Part shown: positions 15,987 through 22,605 of the stretch, piece by piece
Position numbering within the stretch: position 1 is the first letter of the stretch
How the letters are laid out: each line of letters opens with the position of its first letter
Source: Ministeria vibrans ATCC 50519
Lineage: Eukaryota; Protista; Filasterea
Reading direction: 5' to 3'
DNA: 34,861 nt
NCBI GenBank assembly: GCA_943704425.1
Contig: CALSCP010002654.1
Location: 1-34,861, forward strand
Position numbers and translations under genes: made by a program
The notes under the pieces: generated by a model
Seen by the model: only the letters and a program-made list of their open reading frames with translations
Database searches by the model: none
What the model was told of the DNA's origin: nothing

Positions 15987-18900
15987 TTATGCCACCACCT
16001 CACTCTCGTCCATATCGAGATCAAAAATACTCTGCAACTTGGGCGCTGGCGTCGCAATGCTGTCTCGCGAGTCCTCACGCGGATGAGCCGAAATTAGCTC
16101 CACCATTGAGTGCGTGGTGCGCTTGTGCGAGGCAATGGCACTCGAACGACGACGACGCTTGTGCACCACAATCACCGAGACCAGCACGATGACAAGAAGC
16201 AGGAGAGTGCCTCCTGCTGCTGCGGCAATGACAATGATCAGCGATGTCGACAGACCGCCACTGTTGCTTGCGCCGGTGTTAGTGGCGGGCACATTGAATG
16301 CAGCAACAGTTGAAAAATGTGTCACGGTCACTGTAAGTGTGTGTGTCACAGAGTCAGTGGCCACGAGGGTCGTCGATTCCCACACGCCGCCCGCGGGTGC
16401 GATTTTGACTTGAAGACGACCCGCGTTGACCAGCGCGATAAAGTCGTTGGTGCTCAGACCGTTGACAGTAACCACCAGGGTCACTGCAGTGCCAAAGCTC
16501 ATGCTGGGCTCCAGGCGCCACGCATCAGAGACTAAAAAAAAATAAGAATACATTATTATGAAAAAGAAAACAATACACCAACAACGGTGTACCTGAAGTC
16601 CAGGAGGCAGCAGCCGCATCACTGACGTCGGTGGGAAGGGCATGGTAGACCTGGACAGTGGCTGGCGACGTGAGTGCACCCGACGGGAACGTAAGAGAGA
16701 GAGACGTGACGGAGATGGCACCGCCCGTTGCGGAGATACTCTTGGACGCGATGGGGGTGGTGTAGTCGATGGTCTGGCAGTGGGAGCCCTGGCGGCCTCC
16801 TGTGCAGCGACAGGAGTAGCCACCCACATGATCGAGACAAGTGCCGCCGTAGAGACAGGGCTGCGAGGCACATTCGTTGGTGAGGTCAATGTTGCAGAGG
16901 CTGCCCGTGGTCACGGATGTGCACACACACTCAAAGCCAACGCCAACTAGATTGCGACAGGTACCGCCGTTGACACAGGGCTGCGAGACACACTCGTCGA
17001 TGTTCACATCGCACAGTATGCCGGTGAAGCCAGCGGGACACGAACAGGTGAACATATCAACAACATTGACGCAGAGACCGCCGTTGGTGCACGGTGATGA
17101 CGCACACTCGTCCATCTCCGACTCGCACAGCTCACCAGTGAAGCCACTGGCACACGCACACGAGAAAGCACCCACCGCATCGAGACACGAGCCGCCGTTA
17201 CCACAGGGAAACGAGGCGCACTCGTTCAGCTCGGTGGCGCACGTGAGGCCAGTAAAGCCCGCAGCACACACACACGCGAAGGCGTTGACCTGATCAACAC
17301 ACGTCGAGCTCGTGGTGCACGGCGACGAAGAACACTCGTTTGTATTGGTGTCGCAAACCAGACCAAAGAAGCCCGCGACGCACGCGCACGAGAACGAATT
17401 GAGTTCGTCGGTGCACGAAGCAGCATTTTGGCAAGGGCTCGAGGCACACTCGTCAATATCCGACTCGCAGAGAGTACCAGTAAAGCCCGCGACACAACCG
17501 CATACGAAACTGTTGACACTGTCGATACACGAAGCAGCATTCTGGCACGGAGCAGAGGCACACTCGTCGACGTTTGTTTCGCAGAGACTGCCTGTGAAGC
17601 CGGCAACACAGCCACACGCATATCCATTCGCCATGTCACTGCACGACGCGCCATTCACGCACGGCTGCGAGTCACACTCGTCGATATTAGTCTCGCACAG
17701 AGTGCCTGTAAAACCCGCAGCACATGTGCAGATATAACCGTTGGTGCTGTCGGCACAACTCGCACCGTTTAGGCAGGGGGTAGACGAGCACTCGTCGTTG
17801 TCCGTGTCGCACACGGCACCAAAAAAGCCAACAACACAAGTGCACGTGAAGGAGTTCACACCGTCCTGACAGGTACCGCCATTCTGACACGGTATCGACG
17901 CACACTCGTTAACATTTGTCTCGCACATCGCACCCATGTAGCCGGCCTGACAAAAGCATGAGAATGCATTGTGTAGGTTGTTGCATGATGCGCCATTCTG
18001 ACACGGCATCGACGCACACTCGTCAATGTCACTCTCGCACACCAGTCCCGTGTAGCCAGGGTCACACGCACACGAGTACGAATTGATTTTGTCAGTGCAC
18101 ACTGCACCATTTTGACACGGTTGCGACGCGCATTCGTCAATGTTGGTCTCACACCGAACGCCCGTGTAGCCAGCGGAACAACTACACGCAAAGGCGTCGA
18201 CAACATCGATACACGTTGCACCATTGATGCACGGTTGCGACGAGCACTCGTTGGTATCCGTATCGCACAGCAGGCCAAAAAAACCCGACACACATTCGCA
18301 CGAGAACGAATTGACATTGTCTACACACACGCCAGCGTTCTGACACGGCATCGACGCGCATTCGTTGATATTGGTCTCACATTGAGTACCAGCGTAGCCC
18401 GCATCACAGCCACAGGTGTATCCATTTATTTCGTCGATGCATGTCGCGCCATTCTGACACGGAGCTGAGGCACACTCGTCAACGTTGGTCTCGCACACGG
18501 CGCCCATGTACCCGGCAACACAGCTGCAGAGGTAGGCATCAAGCAGATTAGAGCAGGTTGCGCCATGTTGACACGGATATGAGGCACATTCGTCAATTTC
18601 GGACTCGCACGTCACACCTGCATAGCCAGCGACACACGAACAAGTGTAGCTACCACCGGCACCGTTGATACAGCCGGCACCATTCTGGCAAGGAGAAGAC
18701 TCGCATGGAAGCAGAACGGTAGCGCAGTCGGTACCGGTGAAACCAAAGGCACATATGCATGAGTAGTCATTAACTCCGTCGACGCAACTGGCACCGTTGC
18801 GACACGGCATTGACATGCACTCGTCAATGTTCGTTTCGCATGTGGTGCCGACAAATCCTGCGACGCAGCCACACCAGAAGCCGCTCACACTGTCGACACA

Positions 18901-21900
18901 ATTTGCATCGTTCTGACACGGCGATGAAGCACACTCGTCCGTCTCGGACGCACACTGTGGGCCAGAAAACCCTGCGAGGCACACGCAGGAGAAAGCAAAA
19001 TCCAAGTCGACGCAAGTGCCCGCATTCTGGCAGGGCAGCGATGCACACTCGTCAATATTGGTCTCACACATTGTATCGGTAAATCCTGCCACACAAGTGC
19101 ACACAAAGACGTCGCCGGAAATGGAGCAAGTGGCTCCATTCTGGCAAGGCATTGAAGCACATGCGTCCGTAATGGTTTCGCAAAACTCTCCCGCATGTCC
19201 AACCATGCAGCCGCACGAGAACGAGTCGACGAGATCTGTGCACGTTGCGCTGTTCATGCACGGCTGCGACGCACACTCGTCAATGTCCGTCTCGCACAAC
19301 GAGCCCGAAAAGCCAGACACACAAGTGCACGCGTATCCCGAAACCCCATCGCTGCAGGTCCCACCATTCATGCACGGCTGTGACGCGCACTCGTCCGTCT
19401 CGGCGTCGCACAAGTCTCCAAAGAACCCGCTGGGACACGCGCACGTGAACGAATTCACCTGATCCGTGCACGTTGCGCTGTTCATGCACGGCTGCGACGC
19501 ACACTCGTCAATGTCCGTCTCGCACAACGAGCCCGAAAAGCCAGACACACAAGTGCATGCGTATCCCGAAACCCCATCGCTGCAGGTCCCGCCATTCATG
19601 CACGGCTGTGACGCGCACTCGTCCGTCTCGGCGTCGCACAAGTCTCCAAAGAACCCGCTGGGACACGCGCACGTGAACGAATTCACCTGATCCGTGCACG
19701 TTGCGCTGTTCATGCACGGCTGCGACTCACACTCGTCAATGTCCGTCTCGCACAACGAGCCCGAAAAGCCAGACACACAAGTGCATGCGTATCCCGAAAC
19801 CCCATCGCTGCAGGTCCCGCCATTCATGCACGGCTGTGACGCGCACTCGTCCGTCTCGGCGTCGCACAAGTCTCCAAAGAACCCGCTGGGACACGCGCAC
19901 GTAAACGAATTCACCTGATCCGTACACGTTGCGCTGTTCATGCACGGCTGCGACGCACACTCGTCAATGTCCGTCTCGCACAACAAGCCCGAAAAGCCAG
20001 ACACACAAGTGCATGCGTATCCCGAAAACCCATCGCTGCAGGTCCCGCCATTCATGCACGGCTGTGACGCGCACTCGTCCGTCTCGGCGTCGCACAAGTT
20101 TCCAAAGAACCCGCTGGGACACGCGCACGTGAACGAATTCACCTGATCCGTGCACGTTGCGCTGTTCATGCACGGCTGCGACGCACACTCGTCAATGTCC
20201 GTCTCGCACAACAAGCCCGAAAAGCCAGACACACAAGTGCACGCGTATCCCGAAACCCCATCGCTGCAGGTCCCACCATTCATGCACGGCTGTGACGCGC
20301 ACTCATCCACATCTGTTTCACACACCAGCCCTGCAAATCCGCTCGTACAGAAACACACAAAGTCATTCGTAGCGCCGACCGCACAGCTGGCACCGTTCTG
20401 ACACGGCGACGACTCGCACGGTGGCACAGGCACAGTGCACTCAAGGCCGGTAAAGCCTGCTGTGCAAGCACAGAAAAAGGAGCCCGCACTAGAACCACTA
20501 ATGCATGTGCCGCCGTTAGTGCAACGAGGCACCGCACAGCCGTCGACAGGTGCCTGGCAGAATGTGCCGGTAAACCCGGCGGTGCAAGCACACGCAAATC
20601 CCTGTGTGCTCGCTGAACAGGTTCCACCACTCGCACATGGCGAGCTCAAACACGGATCCCACTGGCTTTCGCACTGTACCCCTGTAAAGAGACCGGTGCA
20701 GTCGCAGCGATACGACGCCTCCAGGTCAACACAAAGGCCTCCGTTGTGACAGGGCTGCGATGCACACTCGTTTATGGCCAAGTCGCACAGAGTACCGGTG
20801 AAGCCTGGGTTGCAGCTGCAGGCAAAGCCACCACCCGGCGCAAACATACATGTTCCCGATGTCGCGGCACATGGCGACGAGGCACAGGGATCCTGACAGA
20901 CGTACGACGACGTGAGATCGACACAGAGTGTGTTAGCGGGACAGGGCGATGAGAGGCACAGGTCAATGTCAAAGCAATCGAAGGTGCCGGCAAGGTTGCT
21001 ACATTCAAACCCGACCGAGCACGGCGACGAAAGACACTCGTCAATGTCGCCGAGACATGTATCTCCCGTGTAGCCGGCCATACATGTGCACACAAAGCGA
21101 TCGGGGGCGTTGGAACATATGCCACCATTAGCGCAAGGCATCAGTCCCGTCCCAGTAAGTGCCCCACAATAGTCCGGGACTGTCTCGCAAAGGACTCCGC
21201 TCACACCAGCATAGCACGTGCACGCAAACAAAGTGGCGCCGTCCACACACGTACCGCCGTTGAGGCACGGCGACGAGGCACAATAGTCAACGTCAAACTC
21301 GCACTGATCGCCGTAGCGGCCCTCGGGACACACACAAGTGCCCAAGGGTGGCATGCATGTGCCGCCATTGGTACAAGGCGACGAGCCACACGCGTCCAAG
21401 GGCGTCGAGCAGTTGGTGCCAGTAAAGCCACTGGTACACGCACACGTAAACGACTGGAAGCTGGCACCGGCGGTGCACGAGCCGCCATTGTCACACGGGC
21501 TGGCAAGGCACGGATCATCAAAGTGACACTGCCCAGCATTTGCGCCGTAGTTCTGGTCGTAGCAGATGGACACCTGAAAGGGTGTCGGAAGCGGACAACT
21601 GCCGCCAAAGTAGAGCAGGAGTTGAATGCCTGCGTGCAATGGAAAGAGTAAAAGAACAGATAAAAAACACAAAAATTAATTTACCTTTGGGGTTCTTGGA
21701 GCCGAGCGAAGGATAAGTGACAAATTTTTGCTCGAGAAGCACCGGAGGATTGCACGAGAAGAGCGAATAGGTAGTCATGCTGTCGGTGAAGTCTTGCTGC
21801 AACGTGTACTTGCGGCCGACACGAAGCGGCGTATCGAACGTCTGGAGCAACTCCGGAGGCGCACCGGACGCAAAGGGCTGTTGGGAGTCGACATAGTCGT

Positions 21901-22605
21901 ACGACGCAATCTGGATGTAGTCTGCAAGGGCACAGTTGGGCACATTCTCGTTCATGCCCTGGTACGTCATGCCGTAGGGGGCGCCGGTGGACGAGTCGAT
22001 GGCTGGCTGTGAGACGCGCGTCACACACGACGGATGGCGTCGCCACACAAAGCGCGAGCTATGCTTGTGGTGCGGCTCGCGGTTGAAGAGGAAGTTGTAG
22101 CCCAGGTCACCGCGAGCACGCCCTGCAGGGAAAGAGGGGGTGGGAGAGTCCCGGGTGTGAGCAGGAGAGGGTGTAATGTGAAAACAAGGTCGGACCGAAC
22201 AACTTGTTCCAGTTTGAGACACAGCCGCCGCGATTGGTGCTGCTGGTGCCGCCAAAGAGGTACGTCGGGGTGTTTGGGTCGAACACAACGTTGACGCTGG
22301 TCGTTGACGACGTCACATACTCGTGCGGAGTGAAAATATTGTCAAATGCATCCTTGACAATAATAAAAAAAAAACAAAACAAAAGATAAGAAAAAAAAAA
22401 TGTCAGCGGGTCCTTCTGGTCAAAACAGCAGCACTGCACACACACACACACAACACATATACAATATACACACCCACACGATGCGTACCGTTGTGTAGTG
22501 GCCGCCGTCGGCACTTCTGACAGTTTGGCACTTATCAACCGCCATTGCCCCGTGCAGCGCCGCCACGGCCATCAGCAGGATCCCCCAGACGCGCATGAGT
22601 TTCAT
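15987..22605 (-). CDS. Giant type I membrane protein: signal peptide, novel N-terminal domain, ~42 Notch/fibropellin-like (Ca-binding) EGF repeats, ZU5-like domain with HFS motif, TM helix, ~58-aa tail; 5 exons
   Basis: Signal MKLMRVWGILLMAVAALHGAMA from ATG 22605; four GT-AG introns join in frame. Repeats of D(I/V)(D/N)ECxSxPCxNGxTCxDxxxx(Y/F)xCxCxxG(F/Y)xGxxC counted by hand (40 full, 2 truncated). TM LIIVIAAAAGGTLLLLVIVLVSVIVV is followed by HKRRRR. No LNR or ankyrin repeats, so not a true Notch. Confidence 0.92.
19238..20304. repeat. Coding tandem repeat, 228-bp unit (2 EGF domains) x ~4.7, near-identical
   Basis: Near-identical shadow ORFs recur at 19245, 19473, 19701, 19929 and 20157 (period 228); only a few substitutions between units. 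Confidence 0.97.

What the first reader, a model, noticed from the sequence alone, without database searches (positions are those of the whole stretch)
15987..16770. Notch-like EGF receptor with a juxtamembrane ZU5-like 'HFS' self-cleaving module
Seen: after the last EGF, the spliced sequence reads SKSISATGGAISVTSLSLTFPSGALTSPATVQV..VSDAWRLEPSMSFGTAVTLVV..GVWE..TLTVTVTHFSTVAAF (HFS codons at 16311-16319), then a ~15-aa linker, one TM helix and a short tail. Known: GG..l.(i/f)P.GAl...S.v...P..F..pv.l is the ZU5 pattern, and HF|S is the autoproteolysis site in the PIDD1 ZU5 regions and in Nup98. Characterised animal ZU5 domains (UNC5, ankyrin, PIDD, ZO-1) are cytosolic. Inference: here the domain is extracellular, in the position occupied by the Notch NRR, mucin SEA or adhesion-GPCR GAIN domain. 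It could self-cleave to give a non-covalent heterodimer, so that force on the ~42-EGF stalk sheds the ectodomain and exposes a stub starting STVAAF. That would be an independently assembled Notch/aGPCR-like shedding or mechanosensing system. I do not recall this architecture being described.
Basis: partly seen in the sequence, partly recalled or inferred. Interest (0 to 1): 0.82.

Follow-up and report, generated by a model that had tools for sequence, protein, structure and literature searches.

The report
Self-cleaving-type ZU5 domain above membrane anchor
A giant EGF-repeat surface protein of an unidentified single-celled eukaryote has, right above its membrane anchor, a ZU5/GAIN-type domain with the intact 'HFS' self-cleavage motif; the same module sits in at least 40 receptors of this genome, so the domain kind is known but its use as a general membrane-proximal module in eukaryotic receptors appears undescribed.

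Summary
On the minus strand, a 42-EGF exon ends at 16593. A 61-nt GT-AG intron follows. The last exon (15987-16531) encodes HFS (16311-16319), a 23-residue linker, the only TM helix and a 58-residue tail.

A profile of 30 paralogues, built without the window, matches exon A at positions 4-62 and exon B at 70-150. The splice therefore restores one domain.

At least 40 copies exist in this genome, in EGF receptors, receptor tyrosine kinases and adhesion GPCRs. In a 31-row alignment, 28 keep H/S-[FL]-[ST].

The nearest relatives are bacterial surface proteins. These fit the description of 'MAIN' domains, which were recently shown to cleave at HF|S.

Cleavage here is inferred, not shown. The novelty claim is overstated: ZU5-GAIN homology and extracellular ZU5 domains are published. 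The scan had already noted this module on at least 8 other pieces of this genome.

The spliced protein was never joined, so the window's own domain was not folded. The contig is not human.

The parts
22489..22605 (-). First coding exon: start codon and signal peptide (MKLMRVWGILLMAVAALHGAMA|VD...)
   Evidence: Read directly from the sequence. It has a hydrophobic core and a GT donor at 22488/22487. The exons between here and 21630 were not resolved exactly.
16771..21630 (-). EGF-repeat array (about 42 EGF units) within the large exon
   Evidence: Single open frame. It holds 252 Cys, equal to 42 x 6, and 39 strict EGF pattern matches. Pfam EGF, hEGF and EGF_CA hit its last part. It has no hydrophobic segment.
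16593..16770 (-). N-terminal half of the ZU5-type domain (end of the large exon)
   Evidence: Pfam ZU5 E 0.12, profile positions 2-46 of 97. It matches positions 4-62 of the window-free paralogue profile at 30.7 bits.
16532..16592 (-). 61-nt phase-1 intron (GT..AG) that splits the domain
   Evidence: Sequence. Reading through it meets a stop. The profile coordinates of the two exons abut.
16296..16531 (-). C-terminal half of the ZU5-type domain, up to the last beta-strand (TVAAF)
   Evidence: It matches positions 70-150 of the window-free profile at 36.7 bits. The closest paralogue, on G000 contig C894, is 35% identical.
16311..16319 (-). His-Phe-Ser codons: predicted autoproteolysis site (cut between Phe and Ser)
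   Evidence: These columns align with HFS of both PIDD1 ZU5 domains. In the paralogue model they lie in the turn between the last two strands.
16242..16310 (-). Predicted stub: last strand TVAAF plus the Ser/Gly/Asn/Thr linker (23 residues)
16164..16241 (-). Single transmembrane helix (26 residues)
   Evidence: It is the only Kyte-Doolittle window of 1.6 or more outside the signal peptide. HKRRRR follows it.
15987..16163 (-). 58-residue cytoplasmic tail ending ...DESEVVA, plus the stop codon
   Evidence: No Pfam domain matches.

Best explanation
The gene encodes a type I surface protein made of a signal peptide, a small head region, about 42 EGF repeats, a roughly 140-residue ZU5-superfamily beta-sandwich, a 23-residue stub, one TM helix and a 58-residue tail. 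The sandwich is of the bacterial 'MAIN'/GAIN-subdomain-B type and has no helical GAIN-A part. Shown here: the domain's identity, its fold (on a paralogue), the position of HFS in the turn before the last strand, its conservation, and the membrane-proximal extracellular topology. Inferred: as in PIDD1, Nup98, GAIN and bacterial MAIN domains, the His activates the Ser, which attacks the Phe-Ser peptide bond (N-to-O acyl shift, then hydrolysis). The protein then becomes two chains held together because the new N-terminal strand S-TVAAF stays inside the sandwich. Pulling on the long EGF stalk would extract that strand and release the ectodomain, leaving a stub of about 24 residues on the membrane. 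What the stub then does is open. It could be simple detachment, as proposed for MAIN proteins, or further intramembrane cleavage as in Notch. The module is a genome-wide building block, with at least 40 copies, placed directly before the membrane in EGF receptors, receptor tyrosine kinases and adhesion GPCRs.
Against: No cleavage data exist for this protein or any paralogue. Many true ZU5 domains (ankyrin, UNC5, ZO-1) do not cleave, so the fold alone proves nothing. The window's own exon A piece reaches only E 0.12 against Pfam ZU5, and exon B does not hit it at all. The window's own spliced domain was not folded; the model is of a paralogue about 29-35% identical. The intron has no transcript support. 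The tail has no recognisable signalling domain, so a signalling role for the stub is pure inference. Force dependence is by analogy only.
Confidence: 0.65

Rival explanations
1. The domain is a non-cleaving ZU5 sandwich that serves as a rigid membrane-proximal spacer or binding module. HFS is retained by descent or for structural reasons, as in the uncleaved ZU5 domains of ankyrin and UNC5 or uncleaved GAIN domains.
For: The best structural matches are the non-cleaving ankyrin ZU5 domains. Some paralogues have lost the motif and still look intact (L031, L047, L050). Published work cited shows that some GAIN domains with near-canonical motifs are not cleaved.
Against: His, Phe/Leu and Ser/Thr are the best-conserved positions in a family with 27% mean column identity. 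The same triplet is kept across thousands of distant bacterial relatives. Every tested domain of this superfamily with an intact HFS cleaves: PIDD1 and Nup98 (established knowledge), UNC5CL and MAIN.
Confidence: 0.2
2. The domain cleaves, but its role is only to let the cell shed or detach a large adhesive EGF ectodomain (MAIN-like release). It is not a Notch- or aGPCR-like signalling switch, and the stub and tail carry no message.
For: The tail is short and has no domain. The closest relatives are bacterial surface proteins for which release, not signalling, is the proposed function. This reading shares the cleavage step of the best explanation and differs only downstream.
Against: The same module sits directly before tyrosine-kinase and 7TM signalling units in paralogues, which suggests coupling to signalling at least there. 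Presenilin is encoded in the genome, so stub processing is possible.
Confidence: 0.3
3. This is a gene-model artefact: the intron is not real or the last exon belongs to a decayed copy, so no intact domain is made.
For: No transcript evidence was available. Most paralogues have no intron at this place.
Against: The intron has canonical GT..AG ends and a polypyrimidine tract, and its size matches the gene's other introns. Both exons are open, and their profile coordinates abut without loss or overlap. Read-through meets a stop after 25 codons.
Confidence: 0.03

Closest known systems
ZU5 domains of PIDD1 and UNC5CL (autoproteolytic, cytosolic)
   Same: They share a sequence family. The paralogue profile aligns full-length to both PIDD1 ZU5 domains, with HFS on HFS. 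They share the beta-sandwich fold and the motif position before the last strand.
   Different: Those domains are cytosolic and are followed by UPA and death domains. This one is extracellular, follows EGF repeats and is followed by a linker and a TM helix, with no UPA or death domain.
GAIN domain (GPS) of adhesion GPCRs and PKD1-type proteins
   Different: It has no helical GAIN-A subdomain and no GPS cysteines or tryptophans. Pfam GPS does not match it. The motif is HFS, not HL[T/S]. Here the domain precedes a single-pass anchor. The genome also has at least 55 canonical GPS motifs, so this is a second, separate module.
Microbial MAIN domains (Brogan and Rudner 2026, bioRxiv 10.64898/2026.05.12.724683)
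   Same: Both are a GAIN-B-like sandwich without GAIN-A. Both have a conserved HFS that is cut between F and S, with fragments that stay associated. Both are tethered to the cell surface under large adhesion or enzyme ectodomains. The best library hits of this family are bacterial SLH/Big_2 surface proteins of that description.
   Different: Those are bacterial or archaeal and anchored by sortase signals, SLH domains or the like. Their authors discarded eukaryotic hits. This one is eukaryotic, sits in EGF, RTK and 7TM receptors, and is anchored by a TM helix. A direct match to YfkN was not tested.
FAM171A1/A2 ectodomain domain 2 (animal type I proteins)
   Same: It is an extracellular ZU5-like sandwich joined to the TM helix by a short stalk.
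   Different: The FAM171 domain aligns poorly with ZU5 (rmsd 4.8 A, per that paper). No HFS or cleavage is reported, and it forms trimers.
Notch NRR and SEA domains (functional analogues)
   Same: They are membrane-proximal modules under a long EGF or mucin stalk that are pre-cleaved and release the ectodomain under force.
   Different: The folds are unrelated. The window protein has no LNR, NOD or SEA match, no furin-type S1 site was examined, and it has no ANK/RAM tail.

Membership tests
ZU5 superfamily (Pfam PF00791 and relatives) | Sequence-profile match to ZU5 | tested here: met
   For the window alone the match is weak: exon A E 0.12, exon B none. At family level it is met. The profile of 32 rows hits ankyrin ZU5 at 7e-17, ZO-1 at 4e-4 and both PIDD1 ZU5 domains. 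Six paralogues pass the Pfam cut-off. The window's exons match the window-free family profile.
ZU5 superfamily (Pfam PF00791 and relatives) | ZU5 beta-sandwich fold | tested here: met
ZU5 superfamily (Pfam PF00791 and relatives) | H-F-S in the turn before the last strand (autoproteolytic members) | tested here: met
   HFS is at 16311-16319 and aligns to the HFS of PIDD1. In the model it lies between strands 133-140 and 143-148.
ZU5 superfamily (Pfam PF00791 and relatives) | ZU5-UPA-death domain supramodule of the animal cytosolic members | tested here: not met
   A linker, a TM helix and a 58-residue tail follow the domain. There is no Pfam match to UPA or Death.
Autoproteolytic domain (any of ZU5/GAIN/MAIN/Nup98) | Actual cis-cleavage at the motif | not testable with these tools
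   This needs protein expression, with wild type compared to Ser-to-Ala.
GAIN domain | Helical subdomain A plus beta subdomain B | tested here: not met
   The domain is about 140 residues and starts right after the last EGF. The model is all-beta. Only subdomain B is matched.
GAIN domain | GPS motif with conserved Cys/Trp and HL[T/S] | tested here: not met
   There is no Pfam GPS hit on the window's C-terminal 269 + 180 residues. The window's domain has no Cys, and its motif is HFS.
GAIN domain | Position immediately before the first TM segment | tested here: met
   There are 23 residues between Ser and the TM helix.
MAIN domain (Brogan and Rudner 2026) | GAIN-B-like sandwich without GAIN-A, conserved HFS, surface tether | tested here: met
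   The features are as described.
MAIN domain (Brogan and Rudner 2026) | Sequence relationship to the founding member (B. subtilis YfkN) and microbial origin | not tested
   No reference copy of YfkN was available by reference. The best hits are Bacillota-type SLH/Big_2 proteins with Pfam ZU5. The host here is a eukaryote.
Notch | LNR/NOD negative regulatory region and RAM-ANK intracellular domain | tested here: not met
   Pfam finds only EGF-type families before the ZU5 domain and nothing in the tail.
SEA domain | Alpha/beta SEA fold with G|SVVV-type site | tested here: not met
   The model is all-beta, and no SEA entry appears among the structure matches.

The most novel reading that the evidence does not exclude
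In this protist the ZU5/MAIN-type HFS domain is a general force-sensitive, self-cleaving switch placed under the ectodomains of three receptor classes: EGF-only receptors, receptor tyrosine kinases and adhesion GPCRs. In the window's protein it would act like Notch. Pulling on the 42-EGF stalk would remove the N-terminal fragment, and the stub of about 24 residues would then be cut within the membrane (presenilin is present), freeing the 58-residue tail. That would be a second solution, evolved in parallel, to mechanical receptor activation near the origin of animals, and the first self-cleaving receptor tyrosine kinases.
Probability: 0.15. Interest if true: 0.85.

Novelty: new variant of a known kind. 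Interest (0 to 1): 0.6.

Why it matters
Self-cleaving membrane-proximal domains (GAIN, SEA, the Notch NRR) are how animal cells turn pulling forces into signals. The ZU5/GAIN/Nup98 superfamily is known, and its bacterial surface members were shown to cleave only in 2026. This genome places the simple HFS form of that domain directly above the membrane in dozens of eukaryotic receptors, kinases and adhesion GPCRs included. In the adhesion GPCRs it occurs together with a canonical GPS further out. That gives a natural intermediate between bacterial surface-release domains and animal GAIN-type mechanoreceptors. It also gives a set of testable proteins. The window's copy is a simple one: EGF stalk, domain, anchor. 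If the module cleaves, receptor tyrosine kinases and Notch-like proteins with built-in autoproteolysis would be new. If it does not, it is one more lineage-specific domain shuffle.

Tried and rejected
1. Pfam on the two exon pieces alone gave only ZU5 E 0.12 for exon A and nothing for exon B. Seven HFS paralogue domains gave no Pfam hit at E 1 or below. Single sequences are too divergent, and only the family profile made the link.
2. The word-index protein search was blank three times: the window's big exon with region 1630-1693, paralogue L025 with region 495-650, and P0082 with region 95-245, which found only itself. These blanks say little, because relatives share too few exact words and candidates are limited by length.
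The named prokaryotic distribution and a direct YfkN match were therefore not obtained.
4. The organism was not identified. Run accessions SRR23272272 and SRR33270664 appear in no held paper. Cluster look-ups gave no names for the near-identical proteins.
5. Liao et al. 2014 (PMC4258472) is not held. Its content is cited only through other papers and from memory.
6. Notch, SEA and canonical GAIN membership were considered and rejected; see the membership tests.
7. The ESM Atlas gave only unnamed bacterial clusters and one bacterial 'ZU5 domain-containing' cluster. That is consistent but adds little.
8. Left out on instruction: building, searching or folding the joined (spliced) protein. Exons were searched apart by reference, and an intronless paralogue was folded instead.

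Full report
**What is in the window**

The finding lies on the minus strand. One open frame (16525-21672) encodes an uninterrupted EGF array. It contains 252 cysteines, which equals 42 six-cysteine units. Pfam EGF, hEGF and EGF_CA match its last part.

After the last EGF the frame reads IDYTTPIASKSISATGGAISVTSLSLTFPSGALTSPATVQV... and runs into a stop 25 codons past a GT at 16592/16591. A 61-nt intron (16532-16592) has GT..AG ends and a long pyrimidine tract, and it resembles the gene's other short introns. It joins in phase 1 to the last exon (16531 down to the stop at 15987-15989).

That exon reads SDAWRLEPSMSFGTAVTLVV...GVWE...TLTVTVTHFSTVAAF. Next come 23 residues: the TVAAF strand plus a Ser/Gly/Asn/Thr linker. 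Then comes the only strongly hydrophobic segment of the whole protein (16164-16241), then HKRRRR and a 58-residue tail.

At the 5' end, an exon at 22489-22605 encodes a typical signal peptide. The signal peptide, the disulfide-rich EGF repeats, the single helix and the basic stretch after it together give a type I topology with the domain outside the cell. This topology is inferred from sequence, not measured. The contig is not human.

**How the spliced model was handled**

They were translated, searched and aligned apart, by reference. The step of folding or searching the joined domain was left out.

To test the splice without joining, I built a profile from 30 paralogous domains with the window's rows excluded. 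Exon A matches profile positions 4-62 (30.7 bits). Exon B matches positions 70-150 (36.7 bits), including the HFS columns. The few unaligned residues at the end of exon A fill the gap. The two exons are therefore the two halves of one domain, with nothing missing or duplicated.

**A large family in the same genome**

Searching the window's own assembly (29.7 Mb, 2860 contigs) with exon B found eight further places. Each ends in H[FL]S, followed within about 20-30 residues by a hydrophobic helix.

Pfam ZU5 itself scores above its curated cut-off at six other places. All of these lie after EGF repeats and before a TM helix.

A profile of these domains finds 43 places in the genome. In the 31 rows of alignment A2 that cover the motif, the triplet is HFS 19, SFS 5, HLS 3, HLT 1 and degenerate 3. 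The Ser/Thr position is kept in 29 of 31, against 27% mean column identity.

Twenty-eight copies with an intact motif lie directly before a membrane segment. The degenerate copies are mostly those followed by further EGF repeats. They share an insertion and may trace to a single loss.

Pfam scans of the flanking open frames give three architectures:
- EGF(n)-domain-TM-short tail, as in the window.
- EGF(n)-domain-TM-tyrosine kinase.
- GPS-EGF(n)-domain-7tm_2, that is, adhesion-type GPCRs in which HFS sits about 20 residues before TM1 and a canonical GPS lies further out.

The genome also has at least 55 canonical GPS motifs and about 50 7tm_2 receptors. The HFS module is therefore an additional element, not a replacement for a lost GAIN.

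**What the domain is**

Single sequences are too divergent for Pfam, but the family profile is decisive.
- Against all PDB sequences it hits both ZU5 domains of ankyrin-B/R/G (E 7e-17 to 1e-8), ZO-1 ZU5 (4e-4) and UNC5B (0.2).
- Against 1.84 billion representative proteins it finds 14,941 at E 1e-3 or better.
- One of these is PIDD1 of a lizard, named by its source. Both of its ZU5 domains align over the full profile, with the family's HFS on PIDD1's two HFS triplets. In human PIDD these are the known autocleavage sites; that is established knowledge, not tested here.

The AlphaFold2 model of the closest intronless paralogue (contig C894, 35% identical to exon B) was made with the 32-row alignment. 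It has pLDDT 86 and pTM 0.83 and is an all-beta sandwich. HFS (residues 140-142) lies in the tight turn between the last two strands.

|---|---|---|
| Ankyrin ZU5 | 13.7 | rmsd 2.4 A over 128 residues |
| BAI3 GAIN subdomain B | 10.7 | |
| CD97 GAIN | 10.4 | |
| ZO-1 ZU5 | 9.6 | |
| NLRP1 FIIND | 9.1 | |
| UNC5B | 8.5 | |

The domain is a ZU5-superfamily member. It lacks the helical GAIN-A part, the GPS cysteines, and the UPA/death domains of the animal cytosolic ZU5 proteins.

**Nearest relatives and prior art**

Most of the best 150 library hits are cysteine-poor. Many carry the domain near the N-terminus or in tandem. They have HFS, HFT, HLS or SFS at the same columns.

Those I scanned are bacterial surface proteins with SLH, Big_2, Fn3_assoc or copper-amine-oxidase-N domains, and several also pass Pfam ZU5. 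The ESM Atlas look-alikes are bacterial too.

This fits three published lines of work:
- Zhang et al. 2012 placed GPS and Nup98 in the ZU5 superfamily. They also described ZU5 autopeptidases in bacterial surface proteins and polymorphic toxins (PMC3482391).
- Liao et al. 2014 proposed a common autoproteolytic ancestor of GAIN, ZU5 and Nup98. That paper is not held and is cited through. From memory, its abstract also names extracellular ZU5-like domains in CILP and FAM171.
- Brogan and Rudner 2026 showed experimentally that bacterial and archaeal 'MAIN' domains, which are GAIN-B-like sandwiches with a conserved HFS, cut between Phe and Ser. They showed that Ser-to-Ala abolishes this, that the two fragments stay associated, and that the proteins are tethered to the cell surface. 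They removed eukaryotic hits from their survey and do not mention ZU5.

In animals, the FAM171A1/A2 ectodomain has a ZU5-like domain joined to the TM helix by a short stalk.

I found no paper that describes EGF-ZU5(HFS)-TM proteins, or receptor tyrosine kinases with an extracellular ZU5, in protists. Searches for ZU5 with Capsaspora or with choanoflagellate returned nothing relevant.

One protein from another organism's reads (P0082) has a Ser/Thr/Pro-rich region, the domain with HFS, a TM helix and a tyrosine kinase. The layout is therefore not confined to this genome. Two library proteins are 98-99% identical to paralogues here, so a near-identical strain exists in public reads.

**How it most likely works**

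Shown:
- the identity of the domain;
- the fold, on a paralogue;
- the motif's position and conservation;
- the extracellular membrane-proximal placement.

Inferred: cis-autoproteolysis at HF|S by the His/Ser mechanism of this superfamily, giving two chains held together by the last strand S-TVAAF. Tension on the long EGF stalk would then release the ectodomain and leave a stub of about 24 residues.

I put about 0.65 on cleavage with non-covalent association. What follows release is open. The tail has no domain. Presenilin is encoded in the genome, so Notch-like intramembrane processing is possible but unsupported. A release-only role, as proposed for MAIN proteins, is at least as likely for this particular protein.

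**Verdict**

The claims of independence from GAIN and of a wholly undescribed principle are overstated. The superfamily, its extracellular members and their cleavage are already published.

What appears new is the eukaryotic deployment: a MAIN/ZU5-type HFS domain used as the standard membrane-proximal module in at least 40 receptors of three classes, of which the window's gene is one plain example.

The scan had already noted this module on at least eight other pieces of this genome, and one of these (an adhesion GPCR) was followed up. My census was made independently before I saw those notes, and it agrees with them.

Noticed in passing
G000 contigs C2584 (L020), C2066 (L035), C572 (L040, L043), C1103 (L038): These are adhesion-type GPCRs in which the HFS domain lies about 20 residues before TM1 of a 7tm_2 domain. 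In four of the five, a canonical GPS motif lies several hundred residues further out in the same open frame, so one ectodomain carries two candidate self-cleavage modules.
   Followed up: partly
G000 loci L017, L018, L019, L022, L024, L028, L029, L037, L046: These are receptor tyrosine kinases with the layout EGF(n), HFS/HLS domain, TM helix, Tyr kinase. I know of no receptor tyrosine kinase with an autoproteolytic-type juxtamembrane domain.
   Followed up: partly
G000, whole genome: There are at least 55 GPS motifs above the Pfam cut-off and about 50 7tm_2 matches in a 29.7-Mb genome. That is an unusually large adhesion-GPCR repertoire for a small eukaryotic genome.
   Followed up: no
Library proteins P0002, P0004, P0006, P0009, P0043, P0057: These are cysteine-rich proteins from metagenomes with 2-5 tandem ZU5-type domains ending C-G-x-T-D-H-F-T-N-F-A-I-L-L. 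After the predicted cut the sequence is almost the adhesion-GPCR tethered-agonist consensus (TNFAxLM). Even so, the only one I scanned, P0002, matches Pfam ZU5 and not GPS. It may be an intermediate form between ZU5 and GPS.
   Followed up: no
Library proteins P0139, P0142: Their layout is CarboxypepD_reg, fn3, ZU5 with HFS/HLS, then a TM-like segment. It is the same pairing of a carboxypeptidase-regulatory-like domain with a ZU5-like domain next to a TM helix that is reported for animal FAM171 ectodomains.
   Followed up: no
window 15990-16010 and the C-termini of paralogues L021, L023, L025, L026, L030, L031, L036, L053: The short-tail family members end in similar acidic-x-hydrophobic C-termini...SEVVA, DEFVA, TEDFA, DEIAM, TEDYV, HEENV, DGEDV, GNPEV, GSSEV. 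This may be a shared PDZ-type or export signal. Several tails also carry NPxxF-like motifs.
   Followed up: no
G000 loci L031, L047, L050, L055, L057: These copies have lost the H-F-S triplet (GPG, APS, APG and the like). At least L031, L047 and L050 share an Arg-rich, Cys-containing insertion. All except L031 are followed by further EGF repeats instead of a TM helix. They look like one subfamily in which the domain became internal and non-catalytic.
   Followed up: partly
G000 loci L023, L027, L030, L044, L053: This subfamily has C-x-T-S-F-S instead of HFS. SF|S is the cleavage motif of the NLRP1/CARD8 FIIND (PMC3210808). Three of the five (L023, L027, L030) pass Pfam's ZU5 cut-off.
   Followed up: no
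Logan SRR23272272 (L058) and an ENA assembly; Logan SRR33270664 (L059): Proteins 98-99% identical to two paralogues occur in public read sets, so a near-identical strain has been sequenced. A more distant receptor tyrosine kinase with the same module occurs in another run. None of these carries an organism name.
   Followed up: partly
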